64,000 nt of DNA, taken from positions 124,001 through 188,000 of the IMG/VR virus record IMGVR_UViG_3300010158_000027; one strand, 5' to 3'. The notes below the pieces were generated by a model. It saw nothing but the letters and a program-made list of their open reading frames with translations. It had not been told where the DNA came from and did no database searches. Below, in pieces: positions 35,571 to 62,915 of this stretch. Position 1 is the stretch's first letter. Each line of letters starts with the position of its first letter. Both the position numbers and the translations under genes were made by a program.

Positions 35571-35617
35571 TTTTACCGCTATTTATAACAAAAGTTACAA
35601 CATTATATTTATATAAT

Positions 35618-36079
35618 ATGGCAGACGGAATTACTTATGGTTTAGGGTTCCCCTTTAGACAAAGTCAAAAGGGAACTTATGTGTATTTAACGGAAACTAC
35701 TGGTGATGAAATTAGAAGTAACTTAATACATTTATTATTAACCCGACGTGGTTATAGATATTACTTACCCGATTTTGGGACTAGACTGTATGAGTTTATT
35801 TTTGAACCATTAGACGGACAAACCTTTGATACGATTAAAAGTGAAATCGAAGAGACGGTTAGGAAGTATATACCAAACCTAACAATAGAGAACATCACAA
35901 TTGAGGGGTATGTTGATTCTGAACCATCTATCGGTGATATGCCTACAGAACAATTCGATATACCTATTTATAGGGTACCTGGAGCAAATACGGAGGAATA
36001 CACCGCGAAGGTTAAAATAGAATACACCGATGACAATAACCCATTTGGGTCTAAGGAGTTTGTAATTATAAATTTATAA
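35618..36079 (+). CDS. baseplate wedge protein (gp25-like)
   Basis: FPF..EIRSNLIHLLLTRRG.RY..PDFGT.LY..IFEP. The true start is ATG 35618, 5 nt after TATTTAT. Confidence 0.9.
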   Translation: MADGITYGLGFPFRQSQKGTYVYLTETTGDEIRSNLIHLLLTRRGYRYYLPDFGTRLYEFIFEPLDGQTFDTIKSEIEETVRKYIPNLTIENITIEGYVDSEPSIGDMPTEQFDIPIYRVPGANTEEYTAKVKIEYTDDNNPFGSKEFVIINL

Positions 36080-36083
36080 TATT

Positions 36084-48911: not shown

Positions 48912-51898
48912 TGGCAAAAACTAAATATACCTTCCCACCACAACCAGCAATTGGTTCTGCGACGTTTTCTGATGATTTAGTTGGGTTACAATTAGTCGGA
49001 GGGGGAGGATTGACGCTTGGAAATTTTGAATTCACATCAGCAATTACTGAAAAAAACAATCGTTCATTTACCACTGGAGTTTTTTCGGAACCATTTAATT
49101 TAGAGAATTTACAAATCCCTACAATTGAACAAGCAAAGATTTTAATACAAAAAAATTTCCAAGTATATCCTAATTATGACTTATCACAAATTACAAGTTT
49201 TTCTTTGTATGGTTCTTTACAAAAAAGGATGTCAGCATCCATCACTAAGATAATTAACTTTTTCCCGGCAGCGATACAGGTCGACACGGTAAATTATGCG
49301 CTACAAACGGGGAATACCGCCAGTAATATAGTATATGATGAGATAGCTCATGAAACGTCATTTGATATTGATGTCACCTACCTTAAAAACCCATTTGATA
49401 TTGATTATTCGTTAAATGCTAATAAAAACATTTCGGCAAGACCGATGAAGGTTTCTAAATATAGAAATTTATCTAGTTATTATACTGACTTTTCGTTATA
49501 TATCGAAAACTTTGATGTCGAATATAAAGTCGTTGATTTTGACGCATCACCAACCCTTACTGGGGGTACGGTGACGGTTTACGTCGAAGGGAAACCATTT
49601 ACGTCGACAACAACAACGGACACGTTAATACTTAAACCTAACGATTTAGTCACCGAAAAAGTTTTTAGTGATGATTTTGATGTGGTTGAGGATTATATGT
49701 TAAATAGGGTTTCAAACCCATTATATACTACGGTTTTTAAATATCCCGACTACGACAGTAACGGTAATTTCGTTATGTATACTAAAAAAGTTGTGTGGAA
49801 TTTAGATGGTTTATGGAATTTAGATATTAGAACTGAATTGTTTGATACGTATCTTGCAAACATAAATTACATTGCCGAAGCTTTAGATGTCTATAAAACG
49901 AATTTAATTAGTAGGTTTTTAACTTCAGGGTCATTAAAAGAATTTGATACCCAAGATCAAAAGGTTGAAAAAGTATTACAATTATATGGTAGAAGTTTTG
50001 ATGAAGTTAAAACGTTCGTCGATTCACTTACACATATGACTTCAGTTAATTATGTTGTTGGGGATGACATACCGTCACAATTATTAAAAAATTTAGCACA
50101 AACATTAGGTATAAATACTAATATGTCACCCATAACTAACGACTCTTTGTTGGGTACGATATTCTCAACGGCAACTGAAGTTATATATCCTGGACAATTA
50201 AACCAACAAACCCCTGCGGAATTAAACTACCAGTTTTATAGAAATATAATATTAAATTCTGGATTTTTATTTAGATCTAAAGGTACTAGGAAATCGATAG
50301 AATATATTTTAAGAATGGTAGGTGCGCCTGAGGCGTTAATAGAATTTAATGAATATATCTACATCGCCGATCAAAAAATATCGTTAGATGAGTTTAATGA
50401 GCAATACATTCAAATATCGGGAGGTACTCAATACGTTGAATCACCAGCGTATTTAACGAGTAACACCTTTAAGATTTTAGGAACACAATATACAGGATTC
50501 ACATCTAGTGGGTTTTTAAGACAATCTAATTTAGATTTAATATATTATCCGTTTAATCTTGATACTGGGTATCCTCAGCGTCCTGAGTATACCGACGATT
50601 ACTTCTTTCAAAAAGGAGCGGGATGGTTTGAAGTCACTCCCGATCATCGATCAAGTGAGCAGATTAATACCTCATTATCTAATTTCAATGTCAGTCCCGC
50701 AGTTATTAAAACTAGTTTAAAACCATTCACATATGGGGAGGATTATTTGGACAGGTTTAGAAAGTTCCCATTTTTAGAAATTGGGTATAATTTAACAAAA
50801 ACAATAGATAATAAGAAGTCGTGGAAAGCTGACGAAGTGGGGTTAAGGAAATATAACGAATCCCTATCCCAAACAAATTATTATGTTGAGGACGAAAGGT
50901 TAGTGTTGAATGTTAAAAACATGGAGGTTTATTTGAACATGGGTCAAGGTATCACTTATGATATTTGGGAAATGTCATCTAAATATGGTTATCCAATCCC
51001 AAATTCGGGATTAACGGCACCATACCCAACGCCAGGGCTTAATGACTGGACGGTTATTAACCCTAAACCTGATAAGAAAACATTTGCGGAGTTTGCCCAA
51101 ACATTCTATAATAATTTAATAAATGTTAGAAATAGACAAACCATATTTGATGGTAAAACGGGCGGGTATCCGGCTCTACAGTCTATTTTTTGGAAATATT
51201 TACAAACCGATCAAACTATAAACATACCGAATAATAAATTCACCTACCAAAAAATGATTGATTTCACTTTAGGTTTAGGTGACTATTGGGTGAGGTTCTT
51301 AGAGCAATTTGTACCAGCAACCACTATTTGGAATACGGGGCAAAAAATGGACAACTCAATATTTCACAGACAAAAAGTTGTTTGGAGAAGACAAAGGAGT
51401 TGTGAATACATTGCGTTGTCTTGTATACCATGTGAGTATAATGGACAACCTTATACGTATGATTGTATCGATCAAACAACACAATGTACTTTACCAACAT
51501 TTGACCCAGCATCGGTTTTAAACCAAAAAGTACAACAGTTGTACGCATCTTCAGGGTTTACGAGTACCGATTGTGACGTCACTACAATAATTGCTAATTG
51601 GTCGGTAGTTTTAAAATTGAAAGATATTGTAACGAATGTTGAAACCACATTAATTGATGAACCTATTTTTACGTCCTACGGACAAAGCGCAATCGACACG
51701 TCGACGAACCTACCGGTTTCATATTATAACATTATAAACTATATTGACAATGCCCTCGAGTATTTATATCAAAACGGATTAAACTACTCTTTTGTTGGGG
51801 GAACCCTAATTATTAGTAACTCATCTTGTTACGATAATTTTACAAATAAACAATTAAACCTAAATATTGGTTTAAACATACAAATTAATTGTGGATAA
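48911..51898 (+). CDS. baseplate wedge protein (gp7 / P2 gpI-like domain)
   Basis: LLKNLAQTLG...FYRNI..FLFRSKGTRKSIEYIL motif. Confidence 0.65.
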   Translation: MAKTKYTFPPQPAIGSATFSDDLVGLQLVGGGGLTLGNFEFTSAITEKNNRSFTTGVFSEPFNLENLQIPTIEQAKILIQKNFQVYPNYDLSQITSFSLYGSLQKRMSASITKIINFFPAAIQVDTVNYALQTGNTASNIVYDEIAHETSFDIDVTYLKNPFDIDYSLNANKNISARPMKVSKYRNLSSYYTDFSLYIENFDVEYKVVDFDASPTLTGGTVTVYVEGKPFTSTTTTDTLILKPNDLVTEKVFSDDFDVVEDYMLNRVSNPLYTTVFKYPDYDSNGNFVMYTKKVVWNLDGLWNLDIRTELFDTYLANINYIAEALDVYKTNLISRFLTSGSLKEFDTQDQKVEKVLQLYGRSFDEVKTFVDSLTHMTSVNYVVGDDIPSQLLKNLAQTLGINTNMSPITNDSLLGTIFSTATEVIYPGQLNQQTPAELNYQFYRNIILNSGFLFRSKGTRKSIEYILRMVGAPEALIEFNEYIYIADQKISLDEFNEQYIQISGGTQYVESPAYLTSNTFKILGTQYTGFTSSGFLRQSNLDLIYYPFNLDTGYPQRPEYTDDYFFQKGAGWFEVTPDHRSSEQINTSLSNFNVSPAVIKTSLKPFTYGEDYLDRFRKFPFLEIGYNLTKTIDNKKSWKADEVGLRKYNESLSQTNYYVEDERLVLNVKNMEVYLNMGQGITYDIWEMSSKYGYPIPNSGLTAPYPTPGLNDWTVINPKPDKKTFAEFAQTFYNNLINVRNRQTIFDGKTGGYPALQSIFWKYLQTDQTINIPNNKFTYQKMIDFTLGLGDYWVRFLEQFVPATTIWNTGQKMDNSIFHRQKVVWRRQRSCEYIALSCIPCEYNGQPYTYDCIDQTTQCTLPTFDPASVLNQKVQQLYASSGFTSTDCDVTTIIANWSVVLKLKDIVTNVETTLIDEPIFTSYGQSAIDTSTNLPVSYYNIINYIDNALEYLYQNGLNYSFVGGTLIISNSSCYDNFTNKQLNLNIGLNIQINCG

Positions 51899-54816
51899 TG
51901 GCTTGTATTTCAGGTTATACTAACGACGTATATTATAGTTATTTTGATTGTTGCGGTAACTTACAAACAGGTATTGGACCATTGTACCAATCTGTCTGCG
52001 TTGACCAATCATTATCGGGTAGTGCCGTTGGGGTTTATTTGGACCCACTTTCGGCTTGTACCCAAAATTGTAATACTGGACCCTTAAGTTATAATTTTAT
52101 AACGAGTGGTAATTGTGGTACAATTTCTGCGGGAACAATAACCGTTAATGTCTATGGGGGATCACAACCATATACGATTGATAATGTAAGTCCGGGTAGT
52201 ATATCTGCTCAGACAAACACATCACAATTTGTCTTTACTGGGTTAACGGGAGGGACATACGTTTTTAGAATAAATGACAGTTTAGGGTTACAAAATAGTG
52301 AAGTTTACTTTAATGCTGTGATATCCGAATGTTATACCGCCACAGTGACGTCCGTAACGGGAACAACTTGTGGATTGAGTAACGGAGCTATGGTTGTTAA
52401 TTCGACATCGACATCGGCACCTTATAAATTAGTTATTAATAAAGACGGGAATTTTAATTCAATACTTGACGCCACATCTTTACCTTATACTGTGACTGGT
52501 TTGGATGATGGTATATATGATGTTTTAATATACGATTATGGGTTTACCACGGCAAGAACTGAAAACGTAATTATTAGTGGGAGTACGGGGATTGACTACG
52601 GTTTTTGGGTGGTTAACGCGGCGAACTGTGTTACCAACGGAGGAAAGGCGGCAGTTACTGGTACAACAGGTACGGGTCCGTTTACTTATCTTTGGTCTAA
52701 TGGGCAAACGGGGCAGTTGGCAACGGGACTAACTCAGGGAGTTTTGTCTGTGTTAGTTACCGATTATTATGGGTGTACAACCGAAAAACAAGTTTTAATA
52801 GGACAGGCACTTCCTTTAGGTGTCGGACTAACAACGTCAATAAACCCATCTTGTAGTGGTAGTGACGGATCATTAACATTTAATTTAACTGGAGGTACCG
52901 CACCTTTTTATTATTCGGCAAACACTGGAACTGTTGGTTACACGTTATCTAATAGTTTTACATTGGATAATTTAGCGAGTGGTTCATATGTTGTGAATAT
53001 TAGAGATGCTAACTTTTGTGAGCTAGTTGTTGGTGGGTTTCTAATATCTCAAAACGGATTTTATAATGTAAGTAATACTATCACTAATTCTGTTTGTAAT
53101 CAAAACTCCGGTAAAATTAGTACAACATTAAACGGAACTTTTGGGAATTATATATACGCATTAACGGGACTAACAACCAATGAAGTTAGAAATACCGTAT
53201 CGACAAATCAAACGAACTTATTTGATAATTTACCTAACGATACATACCTACTATTCATATCGGGACAAAACACGACATGTATATATAGTGAAACTATTGT
53301 TGTTTCGTCACAAGAGAAGTTTTCAGTTAATGTTTCATTAACCGGATCAACGTGTGGAACACCAAATGGGGTTGCGATGATTAACGTGGGTACTGGCTAC
53401 ACTAATTGGGATACGGGTAACGGATTATTAGATTATTCGTTAAGTAATGGACAGCAAGTGTATGACATTAATTTATCCGCATTTACATATACTAATTTAG
53501 TGGCTGGAACTTATACTTTAAATGTTACCGATGAGAGTAATTGTACTGTCAGTAAAACATTTACAATCGCTTTGGGTGGGACTTTAAATAGTTCCATTTT
53601 AACTAACGATTGCCAAGGTGGTGGAGCGGGTTCTGCAAATGTTATAATTTTTGGTGGTGAGCCACCATTCACATATATATGGTCAAATAACGTACCTATA
53701 GGTGAAACCGGTAATACCGTAAATAACCTTACTGGTGGATCATATAGTGTCGAAGTGGTTGATGGTAGTGGATGTACAAAATACCACAATTTTACAATAG
53801 ATTGTACATCGACACTGGTTACTGGTGATACCACTTATAGTATCTGTAGTTCTCAGTTCACAACAACAACGGGAACAAAAAGAGGTATATCAGAAATGTT
53901 AAGTGAAGGGTTTTTAGATTTAACCACCGGTTATACTAATTGTATATTAAATTCGGTAACTTTAAATTGTAATATAACTCTAAACGGTAGTGGTTATAGT
54001 CAGAGTTTTGTTATTGCTAATGACGAGATTTGGAGAGAATCTATTGAAACGATTTTAGCGTCAATACCCGAAGTTGGTAGTTATGATGTTAATTTATTAA
54101 ATAATACGTTAACCATAAAATCTAATTGCACCAACGGGGGGATTGACCCAATTGGTAATGGTGAGTTTGTTTTAGAACTTGAAATAAATTACGATATAAG
54201 TTGTGAAGGTGTTTTACCGGCACCGACACCTACACCAACAGCAGTACCATACCCACTTTTCTTTGTGAAGGCTTGTTGTGTATTGGATAGTGATGGTATT
54301 ATGGGGTTACCTGCAGTTTTTGCTACGGGTACTAGAATTGTGGGTACTAATGGTAAATGTTATCAAAAATCATCAGCTAGTGTTGGACCAGCAACTCTGA
54401 CTTGGGATGGTGGTACTACATATGTGGATTGTCCTAGTTGTTTAAGTGTACATCCATGTCCAACACCAATACCTACGGCAACACCAACGCCAACACCTAC
54501 ACCTACAGGTATGCCGAGCTACACAACATGGTACGGTACTGGTAATATGGTTTCACAACCATACGCTGGTCTGGCTTGTAGTGAAGTAAATTGCTCAACA
54601 CAATTCTACACTACGGGATTAACTTTAAATGTTGGTGACGTTATTTATTTGGACGCAGCATTGACGACAAATATAGGTGGTTTAGCGGTTAATTATGGAC
54701 CATCCAGCGGTGGGTGGGGAGTTATGTTCTTATCTAATGATTGTCCAATTGTTGGGTCGAGAACGATAACTAAAGTAAACAATCTAGGTAAAATCATATT
54801 AAAATACACTTGTTAA
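51898..54816 (+). CDS. fibre/appendage protein with about 7 SprB-like repeats, Cys module and Pro-Thr linkers
   Basis: For example C..NGG..GTGPFTYLWSNGQT..TGL..G..V.VTD..GC; PTPTPT tracts at 54217 and 54460. ATG 51898 overlaps the upstream TAA. Confidence 0.8.
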   Translation: MACISGYTNDVYYSYFDCCGNLQTGIGPLYQSVCVDQSLSGSAVGVYLDPLSACTQNCNTGPLSYNFITSGNCGTISAGTITVNVYGGSQPYTIDNVSPGSISAQTNTSQFVFTGLTGGTYVFRINDSLGLQNSEVYFNAVISECYTATVTSVTGTTCGLSNGAMVVNSTSTSAPYKLVINKDGNFNSILDATSLPYTVTGLDDGIYDVLIYDYGFTTARTENVIISGSTGIDYGFWVVNAANCVTNGGKAAVTGTTGTGPFTYLWSNGQTGQLATGLTQGVLSVLVTDYYGCTTEKQVLIGQALPLGVGLTTSINPSCSGSDGSLTFNLTGGTAPFYYSANTGTVGYTLSNSFTLDNLASGSYVVNIRDANFCELVVGGFLISQNGFYNVSNTITNSVCNQNSGKISTTLNGTFGNYIYALTGLTTNEVRNTVSTNQTNLFDNLPNDTYLLFISGQNTTCIYSETIVVSSQEKFSVNVSLTGSTCGTPNGVAMINVGTGYTNWDTGNGLLDYSLSNGQQVYDINLSAFTYTNLVAGTYTLNVTDESNCTVSKTFTIALGGTLNSSILTNDCQGGGAGSANVIIFGGEPPFTYIWSNNVPIGETGNTVNNLTGGSYSVEVVDGSGCTKYHNFTIDCTSTLVTGDTTYSICSSQFTTTTGTKRGISEMLSEGFLDLTTGYTNCILNSVTLNCNITLNGSGYSQSFVIANDEIWRESIETILASIPEVGSYDVNLLNNTLTIKSNCTNGGIDPIGNGEFVLELEINYDISCEGVLPAPTPTPTAVPYPLFFVKACCVLDSDGIMGLPAVFATGTRIVGTNGKCYQKSSASVGPATLTWDGGTTYVDCPSCLSVHPCPTPIPTATPTPTPTPTGMPSYTTWYGTGNMVSQPYAGLACSEVNCSTQFYTTGLTLNVGDVIYLDAALTTNIGGLAVNYGPSSGGWGVMFLSNDCPIVGSRTITKVNNLGKIILKYTC

Positions 54817-54819
54817 AAG

Positions 54820-55107
54820 ATGCCATACTCCATAGATATATCTAATATTGTTGGTGGGACACCACCATATAGTCTTTATGTGTGTGATGAAAACATGAAT
54901 AACTGTTTTTTGTTAGGACCAACAGGGGGGACGTATTATTTTAATTCTTTTTTTTCTGGAGCACAAACTCTAATAATTAAAATTGTTGACAGTACGGGGT
55001 GTCTCACATTTAAGTACATTTATTGTGATATTGATACTTTCTTTATTTTAACTGAGACTGAACTCATAATAACCACAGAAAGTGGGGATGAATTAGTATG
55101 GATATAA
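54820..55107 (+). CDS. small Cys-containing beta protein (paralogue 1)
   Basis: [22 protein letters not shown]. Confidence 0.7.
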
Positions 55108-55108
55108 A

Positions 55109-55714
55109 ATGATTATTGAAATAACGGGGGTTACAAATGGTAATGGACCATATGACATTTATTTATGTGATTCGGGGTTAACGGGTTGCTTTTATGTGTC
55201 TGGAGTTACCACTATACCACCAACAATAACCATTGATAGTAATAATTTTTTTCCAGGTGTTGACCCTCTAAAGGTGAAGATTATTAATAGTATTGGGTGT
55301 ACGGATGTTATGGACGTTACTTGTATACCAACACCAACACCAACCCCTACGGCGACACCAACCCCGACAGCCACGCCAACTGCGACACCAACACCTACGG
55401 CAACAGCAACACCAACGCCAACACCTACCCCAACACTGGCTCCCCTCGATTTCCAAACCTTAGTTATTTGTTCATTACCTTCAGGTATCCTTGTCCAACT
55501 TAACACTATAACAGGAGGGGTTCCGCCTTATGATGGTGGATCTACCGTATTCTCAACCCAAGCTGCCGCGTTATTAAACACGTCATGGATATTAAACGTT
55601 GGTAATATTAGTTATGGGGTTTCTAGTTTGGCTGACGACACCTATTGGTTAGTTGTAAAAGACTCTGTAGGTACTATATTAGCAAAATCTGTAACAACGA
55701 CTTGTTATCCGTAA
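55109..55714 (+). CDS. two-domain protein with 36-aa Pro-Thr/Ala linker (paralogue 2)
   Basis: [19 protein letters not shown] followed by (PT/AT)n. Confidence 0.75.
55328..55435 (+). repeat. mucin-like (Pro-Thr/Ala-Thr)n coding tract
   Basis: [36 protein letters not shown]. Confidence 0.9.
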
Positions 55715-55798
55715 CGACGTAAACTAAAATATTCGTAAATTTTAATTATTACTACCCTTTTTGTTGGATTTACGTTATTTTTTGAATAAAAATTAAAC

Positions 55799-57049
55799 AT
55801 GAATACAATTTTTATTCAAATTGCTGCCTATCGAGATCCCCAACTTAATATAACAATTAAAGACTGTATTAAAAACGCTAAACACCCTAAAAATTTAGTG
55901 TTTGGTGTTTGTAATCAATTTCACCCAGACGATGAATTTAATATTGATGAATACCAAAATGACGAAGGATTTAGAATTGAGAATGTCCTTTATTCCAACT
56001 CTAAAGGGACTTGTTGGGCTAGAAACTTATTACAACAAAGATATAGTGGAGAAACATATACTCTACAAGTGGATTCCCATATGAGATTCGCACCCAATTG
56101 GGATGTTGAACTAATTAAAATGATTAAACAACTACAAAAGAAAGGATTTAAGAAACCCCTTTTAACTGGATACGTTTCCTCTTTTGATCCTGAGAATGAC
56201 CCGGCAGGTAGAGTCCAAGATCCTTGGAGGATGTCATTTGATAGATTTATACCTGAAGGTGCCGTATTTTTCTTACCCGAAACGATTCCGAATTGGCAAA
56301 CATTAACGGAACCAGTTCCTGCTAGATTCTACTCAGCACATTTTTGTTTTACATTAGGAATCTTTAGTCAGGAGGTACAACATGATAATGAATTTTATTT
56401 CCACGGCGAAGAAATTGCTGTGGGTGTTAGAGCATACACTCACGGGTATGATTTATTTCATCCACACAAAACTTTAATTTGGCACGAATATACTCGTAAA
56501 AACCGAGTTAAAAGTTGGGACGACGATAAAGAGTGGGGTAAAAAAAATGAATCAGCACATTTAAAAAACAGAAAACTATTCTCAATGGATGGTGAGGTTT
56601 ATAACCCAGATGAGTTCGGAAAATACGGTTTCGGAACTGAAAGGACACTTAGGGATTATGAAATTTATTCTGGATTACTTTTTTCAAAAAGAGCGACACA
56701 ACAATATACCATAGATAAACACTACCCACCAAATCCCTATGATTATAAAACCGAAGAAGAGTGGGTTAATAGTTTTTCATCTATTTTTAAACATTGTATT
56801 GATGTGTATCGTGGTAGTTTAACGGACACGGATTACGATTTTTGGGCGGTAATATTTTTAGATAAAAATGGAGATGAAATCTTTAGAAAGGATGCCGATA
56901 AGAACGAAATTAGTGGTATTTTAACTAAACAAGGTGATTTTGTTAATATTTGGAGAGAATTTAATACAACAATTAAACCATCAGAATGGGTTGTTTGGTT
57001 ACATACAGAATCAAAAGGTTGGGGTGAAAAAATAACGGGGAAATTATGA
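55799..57049 (+). CDS. GT60-like polypeptide alpha-N-acetylglucosaminyltransferase (Pfam GlcNAc family)
   Basis: TIFIQIAAYRD, SKGTCWAR, QVDSHMRF..WD (DxH), FYSAHF.F, FHGEE and WHEY motifs. No signal peptide or TM anchor. Confidence 0.85.
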   Translation: MNTIFIQIAAYRDPQLNITIKDCIKNAKHPKNLVFGVCNQFHPDDEFNIDEYQNDEGFRIENVLYSNSKGTCWARNLLQQRYSGETYTLQVDSHMRFAPNWDVELIKMIKQLQKKGFKKPLLTGYVSSFDPENDPAGRVQDPWRMSFDRFIPEGAVFFLPETIPNWQTLTEPVPARFYSAHFCFTLGIFSQEVQHDNEFYFHGEEIAVGVRAYTHGYDLFHPHKTLIWHEYTRKNRVKSWDDDKEWGKKNESAHLKNRKLFSMDGEVYNPDEFGKYGFGTERTLRDYEIYSGLLFSKRATQQYTIDKHYPPNPYDYKTEEEWVNSFSSIFKHCIDVYRGSLTDTDYDFWAVIFLDKNGDEIFRKDADKNEISGILTKQGDFVNIWREFNTTIKPSEWVVWLHTESKGWGEKITGKL

Positions 57050-57843
57050 GAATTGAAAAACCGACAATAGTTACCGCATTATTTGATATTGGTAGAGATG
57101 CTTGGGATGGATACGAGTTATCCTACGGTACTTATCTATATTGGATGAAATCGATATTGATGTACGACACCCCAATGGTTATATATACCGATGAAAAGTT
57201 ATATGATGAGATAAAAAAAAATAGAATGGTTTGTGACCCAAACTTAGAAAAAACCATTTTTGAAATTAAAAAATTGGAGGATTTAGTTGCCCACCAGACG
57301 TATTATAAACCGGTAAGTGAACTTATGGTTTCAGATGAGTTTAAATCTAAAATACATTTTAATGTCCCAGAAATGACAAAACCATTATATAATATTGTCA
57401 TTTTTAATAAGCTGTTTTATATACAGGAATCAATAATGAAAAAACATTTTGATTCTGATTTTTATATTTGGGCGGACGCGGCAATCCTTAGAAGTGATGA
57501 TCCGACAATTAAAAAAGATTTCCCAAACGTGGATAAAATAAATGATGGATTTAATGATAAAATCACTTTTTTTAGTCATGAATTGGAATTTACAACACCA
57601 AATAAAGACTACCATTTAGTATCACAATTTAGATACATACATGGAGGATGTTTTTTTGTACCAAATAATAATTCGATTGATTTACTATTGGAGAGTTTTA
57701 AAAAAGAAATAAACGAGTCGTTAAATCGAGGGTTTGTTGGTAGTGAAGAAAAATACTTAGATTTTTGTTATCTGGAGAATAAGTCTGAATATAACCTAGT
57801 TAAATCCGATTGGAGGCAATATTTTGACATATTTGGAACTTAA
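57046..57843 (+). CDS. HtrL/YibB-family glycosyltransferase-like protein
   Basis: TIVTALFDIGR..W, PMVIYT, PLYN.V.FNK, YIWADA, GGCFF and GSEE motifs; ATGA overlap with the GT60 gene. Confidence 0.75.
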   Translation: MRIEKPTIVTALFDIGRDAWDGYELSYGTYLYWMKSILMYDTPMVIYTDEKLYDEIKKNRMVCDPNLEKTIFEIKKLEDLVAHQTYYKPVSELMVSDEFKSKIHFNVPEMTKPLYNIVIFNKLFYIQESIMKKHFDSDFYIWADAAILRSDDPTIKKDFPNVDKINDGFNDKITFFSHELEFTTPNKDYHLVSQFRYIHGGCFFVPNNNSIDLLLESFKKEINESLNRGFVGSEEKYLDFCYLENKSEYNLVKSDWRQYFDIFGT

Positions 57844-57895
57844 ATACTTCAATAAAATAAAGTTTTGATTATTTATATATAAAGTTTAAACTTTA

Positions 57896-59521
57896 ATGGC
57901 AAATTTATTATTCCAGGGTTGTTGTTACGATGGTTATCAGTATGTTACTAATGATGGTGATTGGGTTGCGACGGGAGGTACCGCGACGGTAGGTTTAACC
58001 TATCATTTTTCTGGTGATCCTGTTGTACCTAATGGTTGTTATACTATTGTCTCATCATTCGTTGCTGGGTTTAGTTCAGAAACATTTACACAATTAACGG
58101 GAACATACACTCTACAAACCGATTGTTCTGACACTCTATGTATGACGGCAAATTGTTGTTCAAACATTGTGTGTGTTAGCATACCATTAGATGCGTATTC
58201 GGGACTTAATGGTAATTATACGGTATCGGGTGGATTTAATGGATATCCCTATTGGACGGGAGGAACTAGTGGAGGAACCATCTATTTTAATTCAACGAGA
58301 TGGTGTCTTTCAACAGGACTAAATCAAAGTTGTTTATTTTATGGGTCTAACCCAACGTTATATGAATGTCCTGATTTAGATACTAGTATTGTTTATAGTG
58401 GTGTTTGTGTACCAACACCAACACCATATGACCCATGTTCTATTTTAGATTTTGATATATTGACCGAATGTTTGATACCGACACCTACGCCGACACCCAC
58501 GGCAACGGCAACACCCACTCCGACACCAACACCTACCCCAACACCTGATCCGTGTTTAGGGTACTCAGTTGATATTAGTTTTAGTGCAACAACACCGACA
58601 CCAACGGCAACACCATCACCAACGGCAACACCAACACCTACGTTCGCTTACTCAATTAATTCGGGGGTAACCTTTGTGATTGATAGTGGTAATTTTAATT
58701 GTGTGGATGTTAAAGTGTTAACTGATTGTAATAGTAGTGAGATTTATTACGTTTCTGGTCCTCTAGTTTATTCTGGTGGAGTCATTAGTTCAGGAACAAC
58801 ATTTTTTGGTATTATAAATGGTGATTATAAGTGTTTAACATATACTGAGGATAATGCGGGAAGTCCTGGAGACTTATTAACCTCGATTATATCGACGGGA
58901 AGTAGTTGTTCTACTTGTGTGGTAATAACGCCAACACCAGCACCTACGTTGACCCCTACCGCCACTCCAACACCGACGCCAACATCCACTCCAACACCAA
59001 CATACGCACCTAATACTCAATTTGTGTTTACGTCTTGTACTAATAATTCGATGATAATACAAAATATGACACCACCTTCGAATGTTAATATAGGGTTGGT
59101 AGTTAAAGACTTGTCGGGTAATTGTTATAGTTATGTTGGGAATTATGTTGCTTATGTTCCACCTGCAGGATATATATGGTCAAATATTAACGCCTTTACT
59201 GCCGCTACTGCAACGACATATAGTACTTGTATTTCTTGTTTAACTCCTTCACCAACACCAGGACCCGCTTACCGTACTTGGAACGCGAAAGGTGAGTTTA
59301 CGGTTTCATGTCCGACATGTGAATTAGTAAATGGGGGAGCCGACATGACTTTCTATAGTTCATCTGCAGATACGATATTACAAACGGGGGTATATATTTA
59401 TGAAGACACTACTTTAGTTACTCCTGTAATAACGAGTTATGTTAAATATTCAAATAAAATTTATTCAGTAGATTTAAATGGTAAAATTACTGAATTTTGC
59501 ACATTAAACGGTAATTGTTAA
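57896..59521 (+). CDS. Cys-rich modular appendage protein with multiple Pro-Thr tracts
   Basis: 541 aa; PT tracts at about 58411, 58478-58546, 58585-58642, 58927-59010 and 59243. Confidence 0.8.
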   Translation: MANLLFQGCCYDGYQYVTNDGDWVATGGTATVGLTYHFSGDPVVPNGCYTIVSSFVAGFSSETFTQLTGTYTLQTDCSDTLCMTANCCSNIVCVSIPLDAYSGLNGNYTVSGGFNGYPYWTGGTSGGTIYFNSTRWCLSTGLNQSCLFYGSNPTLYECPDLDTSIVYSGVCVPTPTPYDPCSILDFDILTECLIPTPTPTPTATATPTPTPTPTPTPDPCLGYSVDISFSATTPTPTATPSPTATPTPTFAYSINSGVTFVIDSGNFNCVDVKVLTDCNSSEIYYVSGPLVYSGGVISSGTTFFGIINGDYKCLTYTEDNAGSPGDLLTSIISTGSSCSTCVVITPTPAPTLTPTATPTPTPTSTPTPTYAPNTQFVFTSCTNNSMIIQNMTPPSNVNIGLVVKDLSGNCYSYVGNYVAYVPPAGYIWSNINAFTAATATTYSTCISCLTPSPTPGPAYRTWNAKGEFTVSCPTCELVNGGADMTFYSSSADTILQTGVYIYEDTTLVTPVITSYVKYSNKIYSVDLNGKITEFCTLNGNC

Positions 59522-59526
59522 ATAAT

Positions 59527-59814
59527 ATGGGGACAATAGTTTCATTAACATCAACAACAGGTATACTACCACTGGACATATGGATATGTGATTCCTGCGA
59601 TAGTACCGCCACCTGTGTTTATTATGACACAACATCATCTTTACCGTACAGTTTTACTTTACCTTCTGAATATGAGAATAATATCATTTACGCCATCAGA
59701 GTTATCGATGATACTGGTTGTATTTATTGTAACTCGGTAAGTGCATTAACTTTACAATATCAAGACGGAGGATATGCTGAATTTCAAGATGGGGATGAAT
59801 TTGATTTCCAATAA
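59527..59814 (+). CDS. small Cys-containing beta protein (paralogue 3)
   Basis: PLDIWICDSCD..C..IRVIDDTGC; ATG 59527 is preferred over TTG 59515. Confidence 0.7.
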   Translation: MGTIVSLTSTTGILPLDIWICDSCDSTATCVYYDTTSSLPYSFTLPSEYENNIIYAIRVIDDTGCIYCNSVSALTLQYQDGGYAEFQDGDEFDFQ

Positions 59815-59834
59815 AAGACTATATAAAAAATAAA

Positions 59835-61139
59835 ATGGCAAGATTAACAGATAAAACATTAGCATCAACAACGGCAATAACACCAACAACGTTGATATAT
59901 ATCGTAACAACCGGAGACACTTCACAAAATTCTGCCGGTTCGGGGTATAAAGCGGAATTACAACAATTAGTGTCTATTTTTGGTGGAACATCTGGAGGTT
60001 CAGGAACTAGCGGTATTAATGGAACTAGCGGTATTAATGGAACTAGTGGAATTAATGGTACTAGTGGTATTGACGGAACAAGTGGCACATCTGGTATCGA
60101 CGGAACTAGCGGTATCAACGGAACTAGTGGAACATCAGGTATTGATGGTACTAGTGGAATTAACGGAACTAGTGGGTCGTCGGGTATTAGTGCTGACTAT
60201 ATTGGTACATGTCTCGATAATATTAATATATCATCATTATATTCAGGGTTAACTATCAATATAACGACATCCCCTAATTTATCTTATACCGTTGCTCAGC
60301 ATGTTATCGTAGCTTTTTCAAATACGGAACATTTTCATGGTGACGTTTTGACATATACCGGTTCTACGGGTCAGATACAATTAGAAGTAACAGAAACTCA
60401 AGGGTCTGGAACACACTCCACTTGGACAACCAATTTAGATGGGGCGTCTGGGGGTAATGGCTCTTCAGGCACTAGCGGTATTGATGGTACTAGTGGATTG
60501 TCGGGATCAAGCGGTACTAGTGGTTCTTCAGGAACTAGTGGATTGTCGGGATCAAGCGGTACTAGTGGTTCTTCAGGAACTAGTGGATTGTCGGGATCAA
60601 GCGGTAGTTCTGGGGTAAATGGTACATATACGGGAGGAACTATTAGTGGAGGAACAAACTTCACTGGTGGGTTGAGCGCTAACACGGTTAGTATTAGTGG
60701 TGTGACGGTAAACCCAAAACAAACAATTGCGTTATTTTTTGGTCATGATTCAACGAGTCCTGCAGATACTCAAACTTACTTTATTGGTAATGCGATAAAT
60801 CTAGCGGCAACAACTTCAGGGTCAGACAGTAGAAGAGTCATATTACCAAAAACGGGTAACATTGTTAGAGTTGATATTTGTCAAAACGTAGGAGGTACAG
60901 TCCAAACTGGGGCTACCGAATATAGTACATTCACGATAAATAATACAACACAATCCACACAATCAACAATAACGACTACATACATTTATACGGCATCGAC
61001 AGGAAATATTGCATATGACTTAGTGTCTCCATTACCGGTAACTGTTGGGGATAAAGTGGAAATAAGATGGACAACACCCGCTTGGGTTATTAACCCAACA
61101 AGTGTTAGACAACAAATGAACGTTTATTTAGAATATTAA
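59835..61139 (+). CDS. collagen-like fibre protein (Pro-free Gly-Thr-Ser repeats)
   Basis: Two uninterrupted G-X-Y runs (23 and 21 triplets), plus a C-terminal beta-sandwich knob. Confidence 0.85.
   Translation: MARLTDKTLASTTAITPTTLIYIVTTGDTSQNSAGSGYKAELQQLVSIFGGTSGGSGTSGINGTSGINGTSGINGTSGIDGTSGTSGIDGTSGINGTSGTSGIDGTSGINGTSGSSGISADYIGTCLDNINISSLYSGLTINITTSPNLSYTVAQHVIVAFSNTEHFHGDVLTYTGSTGQIQLEVTETQGSGTHSTWTTNLDGASGGNGSSGTSGIDGTSGLSGSSGTSGSSGTSGLSGSSGTSGSSGTSGLSGSSGSSGVNGTYTGGTISGGTNFTGGLSANTVSISGVTVNPKQTIALFFGHDSTSPADTQTYFIGNAINLAATTSGSDSRRVILPKTGNIVRVDICQNVGGTVQTGATEYSTFTINNTTQSTQSTITTTYIYTASTGNIAYDLVSPLPVTVGDKVEIRWTTPAWVINPTSVRQQMNVYLEY
59985..60191 (+). repeat. collagen G-X-Y block 1 (9/18-nt units)
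   Basis: ggaactagcggtattaat-type units. Confidence 0.9.
60441..60629 (+). repeat. collagen G-X-Y block 2 with near-perfect 45-nt tandem repeat
   Basis: 60486-60530 and 60531-60575 differ at one base; partial third copy to 60602. Confidence 0.9.
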
Positions 61140-61141
61140 TC

Positions 61142-61300
61142 ATGGAACTAGGAACATACGTAATTGAAACATATACCGTAAATCACCCAACAGCGGGTAT
61201 ATTAACGAAGCAAAAAATAACATACTACAATAGAAGAAATGAAATCGAAACTATTGAATATTATTATGGGGATATAAGACAAGGGTACACAATAAGATAA
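61142..61300 (+). CDS. 52-aa protein (not in ORF track)
   Basis: Translation MELGTYVIETYTVNHPTAGILTKQKITYYNRRNEIETIEYYYGDIRQGYTIR; it fills the gap exactly. Confidence 0.65.
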   Translation: MELGTYVIETYTVNHPTAGILTKQKITYYNRRNEIETIEYYYGDIRQGYTIR

Positions 61301-61301
61301 A

Positions 61302-62915
61302 ATGGGACAATTTAGTGGAAATACATGTAATATTATAACACTCTTCCCAATGGGGGTTGAATGTTCGGCAGTGAATTCATCTTCGCCGTATAATAATGAT
61401 GGTGCAATTTATTTGACAATTACTGGAGGAACACCACCTTATAAGATTTCATGGAATAATGGTTCTCAGACACAATACTTAACGGGTTTACAATTTGGAA
61501 CGTATACTGCTAATATAACGGATTATTATGGTGATTTTAGTGCAACAACAACTTGTATCGTGAGTACTAATTATGCTGCAATTTTAGAGGAGTTTTTTAA
61601 TTGTACCAACCCAACAGAAAAGATATATTACGTAGCAAACATTAACTCTTTATACCCAAGTAATGGTGTGTTCACTTTAACATCACAATCAGGATGTTGG
61701 GTTAGTGCAGGTATTATTACAAATACGGGACAAACGTTTTACAATTATAGTGCAATAACCACTTCAGGACCATTTGTGGACTGTGATGACTGTTTACCTA
61801 CAACGCCAGAAATAGAAAGTATATCAGGTATGTGTTTAACTACCGTTAAGTCAGTTTTTGGTGTACCATCGTCAACACAATACCAATTTTATTCTGCTGA
61901 TACAATGAACGGATACCCTACGTGGGTTTCAACATCACCTGACCAAAAAATTTATTTTAATACTATGACAAGTCAATGGAAAGTTTCTGGTTGGACATTA
62001 AGCGGTATACCGTCGTTAGGATTAAATGTTTCTCCACCTTTGGGGGTATGGACAGTGGATGGTAGTCCTCGAACTGTTAACGTAAGTGCTGGTAATTGTG
62101 ATGATAAAATTGTTGTGAGACTACGAACGACTGACCCATCATGTAACGTAGCGTCTGACGGACTTATTCAGGTTGGTGGGGTTATTGGTGGAACGGCACC
62201 ATATACGTATTCATTGGATAACATTGTGTACCAAACATCGATTATGTTTAATAATTTACCAGTTGGGAGTTATACTGTTTATGTGAAGGATATTATTGGC
62301 AATATCGGAACGGCGATAGCGGTATTGACGGGAATAAGTACAATAACAACATATCAGATAAATTTATCTCTTATTAGTACTCAAACGTTAAACACAACAA
62401 ACTACGCTCAAAAAATATATAATTGGGGTATTAACGTGACACCACCATTACCAGCAAACCGATCGGTGTCGTTTACGTTATATGATACTACATCAATGTC
62501 TGCGGGTACCGCATCTAACGGATCACCCGTTTTGACATATTCTAACACAACTGGTACGACAGGGACAAGTCAGTTTGTTACGTCAACATTGACAACAACA
62601 ACAAATAGTTATACGAACATACTTTGTCACCCTAATTATTATACAACAGGCATCACTCGAACGTATAATGTTAGTATATCGGGTACAGGTGTTGTTGGTG
62701 GTCAGATATTACAAAAAGTACAAGTCGTTAATAATGGGGTAAAGTGTACGACTACTGGATCAATAAAGGATACGTTATCTATTGGTAATGTCGTTTTAAA
62801 TAATCAACAAGTGTGTGAACAAATAAGTCCTTCAGTAACGCCAATTACCGTTGTTGTTGGAATGTCCGGAACCATAGCTTCCATAACCATAGGCACAGGT
62901 AGTGCATCGATGTAA
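61302..62915 (+). CDS. fibre/appendage protein with SprB-like repeats and Cys module
   Basis: ITGGTPPYKISWNNG..TGLQFGTY and GGTAPYTYSLD..FNNLPVGSYTVYVKD. Confidence 0.78.
   Translation: MGQFSGNTCNIITLFPMGVECSAVNSSSPYNNDGAIYLTITGGTPPYKISWNNGSQTQYLTGLQFGTYTANITDYYGDFSATTTCIVSTNYAAILEEFFNCTNPTEKIYYVANINSLYPSNGVFTLTSQSGCWVSAGIITNTGQTFYNYSAITTSGPFVDCDDCLPTTPEIESISGMCLTTVKSVFGVPSSTQYQFYSADTMNGYPTWVSTSPDQKIYFNTMTSQWKVSGWTLSGIPSLGLNVSPPLGVWTVDGSPRTVNVSAGNCDDKIVVRLRTTDPSCNVASDGLIQVGGVIGGTAPYTYSLDNIVYQTSIMFNNLPVGSYTVYVKDIIGNIGTAIAVLTGISTITTYQINLSLISTQTLNTTNYAQKIYNWGINVTPPLPANRSVSFTLYDTTSMSAGTASNGSPVLTYSNTTGTTGTSQFVTSTLTTTTNSYTNILCHPNYYTTGITRTYNVSISGTGVVGGQILQKVQVVNNGVKCTTTGSIKDTLSIGNVVLNNQQVCEQISPSVTPITVVVGMSGTIASITIGTGSASM

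What the first reader, a model, noticed from the sequence alone, without database searches (positions are those of the whole stretch)
51898..62915. Candidate phage-encoded mucin-type O-glycosylation system: two soluble glycosyltransferases embedded among their putative virion acceptors
Seen: a GT60-like gene (55799-57049) and an HtrL-like gene (57046-57843) are coupled by an ATGA overlap. They are flanked on both sides by fibre/appendage genes with (Pro-Thr)n tracts (975-, 201- and 541-aa ORFs) and a Gly-Thr-Ser collagen. Neither enzyme has a signal peptide or TM anchor. Known: GT60 is related to GT27 ppGalNAc-Ts (DxH motif). It includes cytoplasmic Dictyostelium Gnt1, which adds GlcNAc to Skp1 hydroxyproline, and Trypanosoma enzymes that start mucin O-glycans on Thr. 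PT linkers in secreted glycosidases are O-glycosylated. Virion glycosylation is known in some mycobacteriophages and in giant-virus fibrils. Inference: GT60 primes Thr (or Hyp) on the fibres in the host cytoplasm and the HtrL-like enzyme extends the glycan, giving a stiff, protease-resistant, glycan-coated appendage array. I am not aware of this initiator+elongator+mucin-acceptor arrangement being described for a bacteriophage.
Basis: partly seen in the sequence, partly recalled or inferred. Interest (0 to 1): 0.92.

Follow-up and report, generated by a model that had tools for sequence, protein, structure and literature searches.

The report
Phage sugar-adding enzymes beside Pro-Thr fibres
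A giant bacterial virus carries two soluble sugar-transferring enzymes among tail-fibre genes whose proteins contain Pro-Thr linkers, and comparison with about 230 related loci suggests, without proving, that the enzymes coat those linkers with sugars.

Summary
The window is part of a ~281-kb jumbo myovirus. Downstream of its baseplate-wedge genes lie a PF11397 (GT60-type) gene at 55799-57049 and a PF09612 (HtrL) gene at 57046-57843, joined by an ATGA overlap. They sit among fibre-like genes, and the only three Pro-Thr-tract ORFs in the 64 kb lie within about 4 kb of them.

In 80 related viral loci, GT60 heads a hypervariable island of soluble enzymes that usually ends with an HtrL-like protein. 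The gene just upstream of GT60 has a PT tract in 55 of 79 loci, against about 7% at other positions. The link survives relocation of the island by about 60 kb. It also recurs in bacterial genomes, some beside small Tat-signal Pro-Thr/Ser-repeat proteins. The GT60 model most resembles mucin-type polypeptide GalNAc-transferases, and the HtrL model is GT-A. Phage XacN1 has a 48%-identical orthologue, and its virions were reported to contain stained glycoproteins.

Not shown: any glycan, the donor sugar, the acceptor residue, a hydroxyproline route, or a role for the Gly-Thr-Ser collagen. DNA or host-envelope targets are less likely but not excluded.

The parts
35558..37922 (+). Baseplate wedge genes (gp25-like, then Baseplate_J/gp6-like) that open the distal structural block holding the GT pair
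   Evidence: PF04965 GPW_gp25 at 8.3e-10; PF04865 Baseplate_J at 3.1e-06; phrog_219 baseplate wedge subunit
48911..51898 (+). 995-aa conserved fibre-module protein, used as the synteny anchor
   Evidence: 76 related viral loci. The order p995-p975-p95-p201-[variable]-GT60-[HtrL or none]-p541-p99 recurs
51889..54816 (+). 975-aa SprB-repeat fibre-like protein with PT tracts (nt 54217-54243 and 54472-54507); candidate acceptor
   Evidence: PF13573 SprB at 9.2e-09; tracts located. The ATG at 51898 is the more likely start
54820..55107 (+). 95-aa single-domain protein, paralogous to the N-domain of the 201-aa protein
   Evidence: Sequence resemblance seen; clusters with the p201 family (cluster 1)
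55109..55714 (+). 201-aa protein: N-domain of about 73 aa, then a 36-residue (Pro-Thr/Ala) tract (nt 55328-55435), then a C-domain. Lies immediately upstream of GT60; the best acceptor candidate
   Evidence: The same N-domain occurs in 36 of 79 genes immediately upstream of GT60, and in 32 of those a PT tract follows within 25 aa. The pairing also holds where the island has moved
55799..57049 (+). 416-aa GT60-type (PF11397) soluble GT-A glycosyltransferase with DxH (D92-S93-H94) and an extra C-terminal beta-rich domain (about residues 325-416); proposed initiating polypeptide HexNAc-transferase
57046..57843 (+). 265-aa HtrL_YibB-family (PF09612) soluble GT-A-fold protein, translationally coupled to GT60 (ATGA); proposed second-step transferase
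57896..59521 (+). 541-aa fibre-like protein with four PT tracts (nt 58478-58546, 58583-58642, 58928-58948, 58952-59002); candidate acceptor
   Evidence: Its orthologues follow GT60 (with or without HtrL) and carry 32-73 PT-tract residues, mostly 40 or more
59515..59814 (+). 99-aa single-domain paralogue of the p201 N-domain family
59835..61139 (+). 434-aa collagen-like (Gly-Thr-Ser) fibre protein; belongs to the fibre array, but its role as acceptor is unsupported
   Evidence: PF01391 at 7.4e-16 and tail-fibre PHROGs; GXY runs at nt 59985-60191 and 60441-60629
61302..62915 (+). 537-aa SprB-repeat virion-structural-like protein; no PT tract
   Evidence: PF13573 at 3.7e-11; phrog_26672 virion structural protein at 5.6e-11

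Best explanation
The GT60/HtrL pair is the minimal form of a cytoplasmic protein O-glycosylation island that is widespread in aquatic jumbo myoviruses and has counterparts in bacteria. Proposed mechanism: late in infection, the soluble GT60-type enzyme transfers a first sugar from a host UDP-sugar onto Thr (or Ser) hydroxyls of the (Pro-Thr)n linkers. This enzyme has a GT-A fold, a DxH metal site and an extra C-terminal domain, and the sugar is probably a HexNAc. The linkers join the small globular domains of the fibre-like proteins encoded around it: the 201-aa, 541-aa and 975-aa ORFs. The translationally coupled HtrL-like GT-A enzyme then adds a second sugar. In relatives, 0-8 further soluble enzymes extend and decorate the glycan. 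These include GT2, GT10, GT34-like and PLOD-type GTs, HtrL paralogues, FkbM and other methyltransferases, carbamoyltransferase, DegT aminotransferase, epimerase and a sugar-1-P nucleotidyltransferase. Virion appendages would therefore carry lineage-specific glycans on their linkers. Likely effects, by analogy with O-glycosylated PT linkers of secreted glycoside hydrolases and with mycobacteriophage glycan shields, are an extended, protease-resistant linker and a variable surface. Shown here: gene content, enzyme families, predicted folds, absence of membrane segments, and the statistical and syntenic link between GT60 and PT-tract proteins. Inferred: the acceptor, the donor, the order of action, virion location and benefit.
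For: (1) Family and fold. PF11397 at 218 bits; phrog_24687 'glycosyltransferase' at 3e-160. The AF2 model has pLDDT 86.8. Its best PDB matches are the mucin-type polypeptide GalNAc-transferases T2, T4, T7, T10 and T12 and the Toxoplasma T3 enzyme (E 1e-11 to 1e-9), ahead of the wall-teichoic-acid GTs TarS and RmlT. DxH is invariant. (2) HtrL-like. The model has pLDDT 93.6 and a GT-A fold. Its matches are glycan-elongating GTs: LARGE1, BoGT6a, GfsA, GTA/GTB and XXYLT1. W142, D144 and E235 are invariant. (3) Island architecture. In 80 viral loci GT60 is followed by 0-8 variable genes (46 sequence clusters) and an HtrL-like protein (71 of 81 loci including XacN1). Pfam finds GTs and sugar-tailoring enzymes among them. 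Only 1 of 326 island proteins has even a borderline hydrophobic segment, and no flippase or polymerase was identified in the 30 cluster representatives scanned, so the pathway is soluble. (4) Acceptor link. The gene immediately upstream of GT60 has a PT tract in 55 of 79 loci, against 70 of 981 at other positions (Fisher p 5e-38). This holds in 28 of 43 sequence families. 70 of 80 loci hold a PT-tract ORF. (5) The link survives rearrangement. On a 144-kb contig the island lies about 60 kb from the p995 fibre module. It is still preceded by a protein with the p201 N-domain, a PT tract, a further domain, a second PT tract and a DUF285 head. (6) Independent recurrence in cellular genomes. ORFs with at least 15 PT-tract residues make up 15 of 247 ORFs within two genes of GT60, against 1 of 406 farther away (p 3.7e-6). 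Five PT-repeat proteins near GT60 (four of them among those 15) are small, with Tat-type signals followed by Pro-Thr/Ser repeats. In the isolate Jiulongibacter sediminis the island also holds a carbamoyltransferase and an FkbM::HtrL fusion. (7) Cultured relatives. XacN1, Xoo-sp13 and RAS14 each have a 3138-3313-aa protein next to the baseplate wedge with a Pro-Thr/Ser tract near residue 3100, 4-9 kb from the island. XacN1 virions gave at least two Schiff-stained glycoprotein bands (PMC5852040). (8) In two relatives a GT29-like GT occupies the GT60 slot, so the position between the PT-tract genes is kept for a glycosyltransferase. (9) Both enzymes are acidic (pI 5.8 and 5.1), which does not suggest DNA binding.
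Against: There is no biochemical or mass-spectrometric evidence for these proteins. Part of the upstream-gene association is inherited synteny of one gene family (the p201 N-domain in 36 of 79 loci), so the loci are not independent. Ten of 80 GT60 loci show no PT-tract ORF in the DNA fetched. L137 and L153 keep a 62-residue PT content in p541 without GT60 at that site. The island also borders the DNA polymerase gene in most clades. PT linkers are common spacers that need no modification. To my knowledge no member of PF09612 has a demonstrated activity. The donor sugar is only guessed from the family name. The best-studied cytoplasmic GT60 enzyme (Dictyostelium Gnt1) acts on hydroxyproline, and no hydroxylase was seen in the window. 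Virion location of the 201-, 541- and 975-aa proteins is inferred from position and repeats, not from proteomics.
Confidence: 0.55

Rival explanations
1. The island glycosylates other virion proteins, such as capsid or tail tube as in mycobacteriophages. The PT-tract genes are merely its syntenic neighbours at the edge of the fibre module.
For: Virion glycoproteins exist in XacN1, but their identity is unknown. The known phage precedent modifies capsid and tail-tube C-termini (as summarised in PMC12619734). Some GT60 loci lack PT tracts nearby.
Against: The association with PT tracts recurs after relocation of the island. It also recurs in bacterial genomes with non-homologous PT/PS-repeat proteins. 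To my knowledge, the GT60 and GT27 families characteristically act on Pro/Thr-rich peptides.
Confidence: 0.15
2. The enzymes remodel a host envelope glycan (LPS, capsule, or S-layer or gliding-motility glycoproteins) during infection, for example to block superinfection.
For: HtrL/YibB takes its name from an E. coli gene that lies, from my own knowledge, in the LPS core (waa) region. GT10/GT11-type, DegT and epimerase genes are typical of O-antigen clusters. Iyer et al. read cyanophage GT clusters this way (PMC7824862).
Against: The island contains no membrane protein, polyprenyl-phosphate transferase, flippase or polymerase: 1 borderline hydrophobic segment among 326 proteins, and none of these families in the 30 cluster representatives scanned. 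The conserved head enzyme belongs to a protein-glycosylating family. The genes sit inside a late structural block.
Confidence: 0.12
3. The island hypermodifies phage DNA with sugars (as on 5-hydroxymethylpyrimidines) to evade restriction.
For: Phage GT-A and GT-B enzymes attach diverse glycans to 5hmC (preprint 10.1101/2023.12.21.572611). The island lies next to the DNA polymerase gene in most clades. Variable GT sets also occur in DNA-modifying phages.
Against: No thymidylate-synthase-like hydroxymethylase, 5mC/T dioxygenase or C5-methyltransferase was found in the 64-kb window. The DNA GT-A enzymes of that study carry R...DDD...EDY/F motifs and resemble JGT and TarP, whereas this protein has DxH and resembles ppGalNAc-Ts. 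Both proteins are acidic. Bacterial homologues sit next to exported repeat proteins.
Confidence: 0.08
4. GT60 acts on hydroxyproline rather than threonine in the PT tracts (the Skp1/Gnt1 route), using a prolyl hydroxylase encoded elsewhere in the 281-kb genome or by the host.
For: Gnt1, the cytoplasmic founding member of GT60, transfers GlcNAc to Hyp (established knowledge). The tracts are half proline.
Against: No 2OG-dependent hydroxylase was found in the window or among the annotated island genes. The bacterial neighbours include PS-repeat proteins, which fits a hydroxy-amino-acid acceptor as well.
Confidence: 0.07

Closest known systems
Virion glycosylation in mycobacteriophages (Freeman et al. 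2023, Cell Host Microbe; cited via PMC12619734)
   Same: Phage-encoded, cytoplasmic glycosyltransferases near structural genes; glycans end up on virion proteins; proposed shielding role.
   Different: There the acceptors are the C-termini of the capsid and tail-tube subunits, and glycosylation was demonstrated. Here the enzyme families are GT60-type and HtrL-type, the candidate acceptors are internal Pro-Thr linkers of fibre-like proteins, the phages are jumbo myoviruses of Gram-negative hosts, and nothing has been demonstrated. I could not read that paper in the library.
CAZy GT60 / PF11397: Dictyostelium and Toxoplasma Gnt1 (Skp1 Hyp GlcNAc-transferase), Dictyostelium GntB, and Trypanosoma cruzi polypeptide alpha-GlcNAc-transferases
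   Same: Same Pfam family (218 bits), DxH motif, soluble cytoplasmic form as in Gnt1, and Thr/Pro-rich acceptors as for the T. cruzi and Dictyostelium Golgi enzymes (the enzyme properties are from my own knowledge).
   Different: Prokaryotic-virus context; an extra C-terminal domain of about 90 aa; donor and acceptor untested; no Skp1 or prolyl-hydroxylase partner.
GT27 polypeptide GalNAc-transferases (mucin-type O-glycan initiation)
   Same: Best structural matches to the model; two-domain layout (catalytic GT-A plus a C-terminal domain); DxH; the acceptor preference for Thr flanked by Pro (my own knowledge) fits (PT)n.
   Different: No detectable sequence match to any PDB chain. Alignments have about 10% identity and about 10 A rmsd over both domains, so equivalence of the C-terminal domain to the ricin-type lectin domain is not established. 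There is no Golgi anchor.
Xanthomonas jumbo phage XacN1 (PMC5852040) and its relatives Xoo-sp13, RAS14 and CM1
   Same: Orthologous GT60 (45-48% identity), the same island (GT60, carbamoyltransferase, two ORFs, HtrL-like) beside the baseplate and giant-fibre genes, a PT tract in the giant protein, and stained virion glycoproteins in XacN1.
   Different: The authors did not identify the family, the island or an acceptor. The hosts are Gammaproteobacteria. In those phages the island converges on the fibre genes rather than being embedded in them.
Virus-encoded glycan machinery of chloroviruses and Mimivirus-like giant viruses
   Same: Autonomous, soluble, cytoplasmic GT sets with methyltransferases and amino-sugar enzymes that decorate capsid or fibril proteins. 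GT60-like folds occur in Megaviridae and Pandoravirus.
   Different: Eukaryotic viruses; different acceptors (atypical N-linked sites in the chlorovirus capsid protein; fibril proteins in Mimivirus).
O-glycosylated Pro-Thr linkers of secreted bacterial and fungal glycoside hydrolases; cytoplasmic glycosylation of serine-rich-repeat adhesins (GtfA/B); the collagen-like exosporium glycoprotein BclA
   Same: Low-complexity Thr/Ser/Pro (or GXT) tracts serve as dense O-glycan carriers that stiffen and protect an extended segment. In the SRRP case, modification precedes export.
   Different: Different enzyme families and compartments. These serve only as functional analogies, recalled from my own knowledge and not tested here.

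Membership tests
PF11397 / CAZy GT60 polypeptide (Hyp/Thr) HexNAc-transferases | Significant sequence match to the family model | tested here: met
   PF11397 at E 2.9e-64, 218.2 bits against a cut-off of 21, in two stretches reaching profile position 348 of 352
PF11397 / CAZy GT60 polypeptide (Hyp/Thr) HexNAc-transferases | GT-A fold with a DxH metal-binding motif after the fourth strand | tested here: met
   D92-S93-H94 invariant in 23 sequences. The AF2 model is GT-A, the motif follows strand E87-91, and GT27 enzymes are the top matches
PF11397 / CAZy GT60 polypeptide (Hyp/Thr) HexNAc-transferases | Transfers GlcNAc from UDP-GlcNAc to a protein hydroxyl with retention | not testable with these tools
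   Needs an enzyme assay
PF09612 HtrL_YibB | Significant match to the family model over its full length | tested here: met
   E 7e-21, 75.5 bits against a cut-off of 24.1; residues 7-263 on profile positions 4-265 of 267
PF09612 HtrL_YibB | Is a glycosyltransferase (GT-A fold with a catalytic acidic motif) | tested here: inconclusive
   The model (pLDDT 93.6) matches GT-A GTs and also sugar-nucleotidyltransferases, at TM of only about 0.45. W142, D144 and E235 are invariant. I know of no characterised member
Mucin-type O-glycosylation system (initiator, elongators, dense Thr/Pro acceptor) | Initiating polypeptide HexNAc-transferase homologue | tested here: met
Mucin-type O-glycosylation system (initiator, elongators, dense Thr/Pro acceptor) | Acceptor proteins with Thr/Pro-rich tandem tracts, genetically linked to the enzyme | tested here: met
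   Tracts of 7-36 residues in three neighbouring ORFs. Enrichment next to GT60 in viral and bacterial loci. The tracts are far shorter than true mucin domains
Mucin-type O-glycosylation system (initiator, elongators, dense Thr/Pro acceptor) | O-glycans actually present on the tracts | not testable with these tools
   The only indirect evidence is Schiff-stained bands in XacN1 virions, whose protein identity is unknown
Phage DNA sugar hypermodification systems | A GT encoded together with the means to make a hydroxymethyl- or hydroxy-pyrimidine (ThyA-like hydroxymethylase, or C5-methyltransferase plus 5mYOX dioxygenase) | tested here: not met
   No such family appears among the window's ORFs in Pfam or PHROGs. 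The other roughly 217 kb of the genome was not available
Phage DNA sugar hypermodification systems | GT-A enzymes of that class carry R...DDD...EDY/F motifs and resemble JGT and TarP | tested here: not met
   Motifs as described in preprint 10.1101/2023.12.21.572611. This protein has DxH and is closest to ppGalNAc-Ts
Envelope polysaccharide (O-antigen or capsule) pathways | Membrane-embedded initiating transferase, flippase, polymerase or ABC exporter in the cluster | tested here: not met
   Only 1 of 326 island proteins has a borderline hydrophobic segment. No such Pfam family appears in the 30 cluster representatives scanned

The most novel reading that the evidence does not exclude
Bacteria and their jumbo phages have a general, cytoplasmic, mucin-type O-glycosylation pathway. 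A GT60-type polypeptide HexNAc-transferase recognises (Pro-Thr/Ser)n linkers. An HtrL-family enzyme and a fast-evolving cassette of tailoring enzymes then build lineage-specific glycans. Phages use the pathway to coat their fibres, and bacteria use it on Tat-exported repeat proteins. It would represent the prokaryotic stock from which the eukaryotic GT60/GT27 initiation enzymes arose.
Probability: 0.35. Interest if true: 0.85.

Novelty: new variant of a known kind. Interest (0 to 1): 0.72.

Why it matters
Phage virion glycosylation has been demonstrated only in mycobacteriophages, as far as the searched library shows. If this reading is right, it is also common in large aquatic and plant-pathogen-infecting myoviruses: the database holds more than 6000 GT60 homologues, many on contigs of 100-500 kb. 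It would use an enzyme family until now studied in protists. It would also have a predictable acceptor (Pro-Thr linkers) and a hypervariable glycan cassette comparable in diversity to O-antigen loci.

That would:
- give a function to the orphan family HtrL/YibB;
- explain the stained glycoproteins of XacN1;
- bear on virion stability, host recognition and immune recognition of jumbo phages considered for biocontrol;
- provide a simple bacterial model for mucin-type initiation.

The hypothesis can be tested directly with cultured phages and with two-plasmid co-expression.

Tried and rejected
- Megablast of the GT pair against 50,697 phage records found nothing. Only tblastn found four jumbo phages.
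- A profile search of PDB sequences with the GT60 alignment found nothing, so fold comparison was used instead.
- The sigma-70 promoter and terminator scan of 48-64 kb was no better than shuffles and is not used. A Bacteroidota host would have other promoters anyway.
- Presence/absence test. Loci anchored on p995 seemed to offer GT60-less relatives. In the one case I could trace (L125), GT60 lies 60 kb away on the same contig, so no clean GT60-negative set exists. L137 and L153 carry a GT29-like gene in the slot.
- Literature searches for GT60 with phage, Gnt1/Skp1 with bacteriophage, HtrL with virus, and O-glycosylated phage fibres found no description of this arrangement. Freeman et al. 2023 is not held.
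- 'Moraphages' (PMC12619734) have four core GT families. I could not tell whether this is the same lineage.
- I considered and rejected equating the C-terminal domain of GT60 with the ricin-type lectin domain of ppGalNAc-Ts. It has too few strands and the rmsd is about 10 A.
- I did not test the rest of the 281-kb genome for hydroxylases, hydroxymethylases or sugar-nucleotide genes, because only 20-kb stretches can be fetched.

Full report
WHAT IS THERE. The window is a stretch of a jumbo myovirus. Identical copies of the GT gene lie on IMG/VR contigs of 281 kb and 57 kb (L007, L002). The window encodes:
- tail sheath (6754-9969), a gp19-like tube and a T4-type baseplate protein;
- a replication block (SSB, UvsX-like, endonuclease VII, exonuclease, DnaB-like helicase, ribonucleotide reductase);
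- gp25-like (35558-36079) and Baseplate_J/gp6-like (36084-37922) wedge genes;
- an uninterrupted plus-strand run of large, mostly unannotatable ORFs up to the window's end.

G+C is about 34% throughout. The finding lies in the distal part of that run.

OBSERVATION.
- The 416-aa ORF matches PF11397 'GlcNAc' (E 2.9e-64) and phrog_24687 (E 3e-160).
- The 265-aa ORF matches PF09612 HtrL_YibB (E 7e-21).
- The two genes overlap in ATGA.
- PT tracts occur in the 975-, 201- and 541-aa ORFs, and in no other ORF of at least 80 aa in the window.
- The 434-aa ORF is collagen-like with Gly-Thr-Ser triplets.
- The 975- and 537-aa ORFs contain SprB repeats.
- Neither enzyme has a hydrophobic segment.

THE ENZYMES. 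Twenty-three GT60 homologues share 62-81% identity with the window's protein. D92-S93-H94 is invariant among them. The AlphaFold model (pLDDT 86.8) is a GT-A domain followed by a beta-rich C-terminal domain of about 90 residues. No PDB sequence matches a profile of the family. By fold, the top 21 hits are mucin-type polypeptide GalNAc-transferases (E 1e-11 to 1e-9), followed by the teichoic-acid GTs TarS and RmlT and by chondroitin polymerase. Among predicted viral structures, the nearest are 'Glycosyltransferase, GlcNAc' proteins of uncultured tailed phages, Megaviridae GTs and a Pandoravirus GlcNAc transferase.

The HtrL-like model (pLDDT 93.6) is also GT-A. Its modest matches (TM about 0.45) are to glycan-elongating GTs (LARGE1, BoGT6a, GfsA, the blood-group A/B transferases, XXYLT1) and to sugar-nucleotidyltransferases. 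W142, D144 and E235 are invariant.

THE ISLAND. The GT60 protein has more than 6000 homologues in the metagenome protein collection, many on contigs of 100-500 kb. In 80 IMG/VR loci the GT60 gene stays 62-100% identical, while what follows it varies. There are 0 to 8 genes drawn from 46 sequence clusters, then an HtrL-like protein. That protein is about 265-283 aa in the window's clade, about 555-560 aa in most others, and about 780 aa where a methyltransferase domain is fused.

Pfam finds the following in the cassettes:
- GT34/DUF273-like, GT2, GT10 and PLOD-type GT domains, with weak GT11 and GT25 hits;
- carbamoyltransferase;
- FkbM and other SAM methyltransferases;
- a DegT aminotransferase and an NAD-dependent epimerase;
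- a HAD::sugar-1-phosphate nucleotidyltransferase fusion.

The commonest cassette family has no Pfam hit, but it carries the HtrL 'WIDAGL' motif. Only one of 326 island proteins has even a borderline hydrophobic stretch. This is therefore a soluble, cytoplasmic glycan-building pathway with a conserved first gene and a diversifying remainder. The window carries its minimal two-gene form. About a dozen close relatives have GT60 alone.

THE LINK TO PRO-THR TRACTS.
- Across the 80 loci, the gene immediately upstream of GT60 carries a PT tract in 55 of 79 cases, against 70 of 981 at all other positions (odds ratio 30, p 5e-38). Collapsing to sequence families still gives 28 of 43.
- In 36 of these upstream genes the protein begins with the same domain of about 73 residues as the window's 201-aa ORF. 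In 32 of those a PT tract follows within 25 residues. The C-terminal parts differ (ConA-like/laminin-G, DUF285 repeats, SprB-like modules). This suggests a conserved anchor, a PT linker and a variable head.
- Inside the window's own clade, the order p995-p975-p95-p201-[variable]-GT60-[HtrL]-p541-p99 is conserved. p541 orthologues carry 32-73 PT-tract residues, mostly 40 or more.
- In a subclade whose fibre module lacks GT60, the enzyme was found 60 kb away on the same 144-kb contig. There it is again directly preceded by a protein with the p201 N-domain and a PT tract.
- In two relatives, a minus-strand GT29-like gene occupies the GT60 slot.

INDEPENDENT RECURRENCE. A scan of one genome per prokaryotic species found full-length homologues (35-64% identity) in many phyla, often followed by an HtrL-like gene. 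ORFs with at least 15 PT-tract residues make up 15 of 247 ORFs within two genes of GT60, against 1 of 406 farther away in the same loci (p 3.7e-6). Some of these loci look like phage DNA. Five others, from Cytophagaceae, Verrucomicrobiota, Ectothiorhodospiraceae and an unclassified MAG, encode small proteins with twin-arginine signals followed by Pro-Thr or Pro-Ser repeats. In the isolate Jiulongibacter sediminis JN14-9, that gene sits between two GT60 genes and beside an epimerase/dehydratase, a carbamoyltransferase and an FkbM::HtrL fusion. These are the same parts as in the phage islands.

The three cultured jumbo phages examined (XacN1, Xoo-sp13, RAS14) have the island next to a 3138-3313-aa protein that follows the baseplate wedge genes and has a Pro-Thr/Ser tract near residue 3100. 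The XacN1 paper reports at least two Schiff-stained virion glycoproteins and attributes them to its two GTs, one of which is the GT60 orthologue (PMC5852040).

MOST LIKELY MECHANISM. GT60 places the first sugar on Thr/Ser of the PT linkers of fibre-like proteins in the host cytoplasm, and HtrL adds the next. In relatives the cassette elaborates the glycan. Gene content, families, folds, solubility and linkage are shown. The acceptor, donor, order of action, virion location and benefit are inferred. I put this at 0.55.

RIVALS.
- DNA glycosylation (0.08) is suggested by the neighbouring DNA polymerase and by known phage GT-A enzymes acting on 5hmC. Against it, the window has no base-hydroxymethylating or oxidising gene, the motifs differ, the proteins are acidic, and the bacterial context points to exported proteins.
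- Host-envelope remodelling (0.12) lacks any membrane component.
- Glycosylation of other virion proteins, with PT genes as bystanders (0.15), does not explain the recurrence after relocation or in bacteria.
- A hydroxyproline acceptor (0.07) is a sub-variant with no hydroxylase yet seen.
- The Gly-Thr-Ser collagen as acceptor has no support, because collagen-like neighbours are sporadic.

COMPARISON AND NOVELTY. The system probably works like mycobacteriophage virion glycosylation and like mucin-type initiation by GT27/GT60 enzymes. It is a member of PF11397 and PF09612 by sequence. It is not a member of the known phage DNA-glycosylating GT-A class or of envelope polysaccharide pathways by the features tested. 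The general idea that phage GTs make virion glycoproteins was already proposed for XacN1. As far as the searched literature shows, four things have not been described:
- the family assignment;
- the conserved GT60...HtrL island with its hypervariable cassette;
- its tight linkage to Pro-Thr-linker proteins;
- the bacterial counterpart with Tat-signal repeat proteins.

I rate it a new variant of a known kind, with interest 0.72.

Noticed in passing
L176:6950-7735(-), L204:6654-7631(-), L195:11414-12115(-), L226:9286-9834(-), L233:10042-10518(+): In bacterial genomes of several phyla, GT60 homologues sit next to small proteins with a twin-arginine (Tat) signal followed by long Pro-Thr or Pro-Ser repeats. 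This may be a cytoplasmic-glycosylation-then-Tat-export system. In Jiulongibacter sediminis the island also has an epimerase, a second GT60, a carbamoyltransferase and an FkbM::HtrL fusion.
   Followed up: partly
L137:16021-16608(-), and the same position in L153: A 196-aa GT29-like (sialyltransferase-family, PF00777 at 1.3e-17) gene on the opposite strand occupies the slot where GT60 normally sits, between the p201 and p541 orthologues. GT29 is rare outside eukaryotes and their viruses.
   Followed up: partly
L158:1-502: An APS-kinase-like gene and a cytidylyltransferase-like gene lie about 9 kb upstream of the GT island on a 144-kb phage contig. This hints at sulfation or other activation chemistry.
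   Followed up: no
L053:15799-16869 (also in L049-L055): A 357-aa LCIB/LCIC-type beta-carbonic-anhydrase-like gene (PF18599 at 4.6e-27) lies downstream of the HtrL gene in one jumbo-phage clade.
   Followed up: no
window 55192-55506(-), 59819-60118(-), 60398-60685(-): Antisense ORFs encoding Gly-Val or Pro-Leu-Val repeats are mirror images of the PT and collagen-like repeats on the plus strand, and are almost certainly not genes.
   Followed up: yes
window 54820-55107, 55109-55330, 59515-59814: The 95-aa ORF, the N-terminal 73 residues of the 201-aa ORF and the 99-aa ORF look like paralogous copies of one small Cys-containing domain ('GGTPPY...V.D..GC', SprB-repeat-like). The same domain heads many PT-linker proteins next to GT60 in other phages.
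   Followed up: partly
window 37995-44309: A 2104-aa protein directly after the gp6-like wedge gene carries five DUF5122 beta-propeller repeats (E 2.4e-39). It probably corresponds in position to the 3100-3300-aa proteins of XacN1-like phages, but it has no PT tract.
   Followed up: no
window 27586-35245: A replication and nucleotide block (SSB, UvsX-like, endonuclease VII, exonuclease, DnaB-like helicase, ribonucleotide reductase) is inserted between the tail sheath/tube genes and the baseplate wedge genes.
   Followed up: no
L161, L162, L164, L168 (genome contigs) and window 51889-54816, 61302-62915: Host hint: the closest GT60 copies in the species-genome collection (63-64% identity, G+C 33-34%) are on contigs binned into Saprospiraceae MAGs, one of them 230 kb long. 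The fibre proteins use SprB repeats typical of Bacteroidota.
   Followed up: no
window 1986-4853(-): A 955-aa protein combines a region matching terminase-large-subunit or DnaC-type ATPase PHROGs (residues about 140-540) with a helicase region (residues 537-936, phrog_62 at 3e-105). This is an unusual fusion that I did not examine.
   Followed up: no
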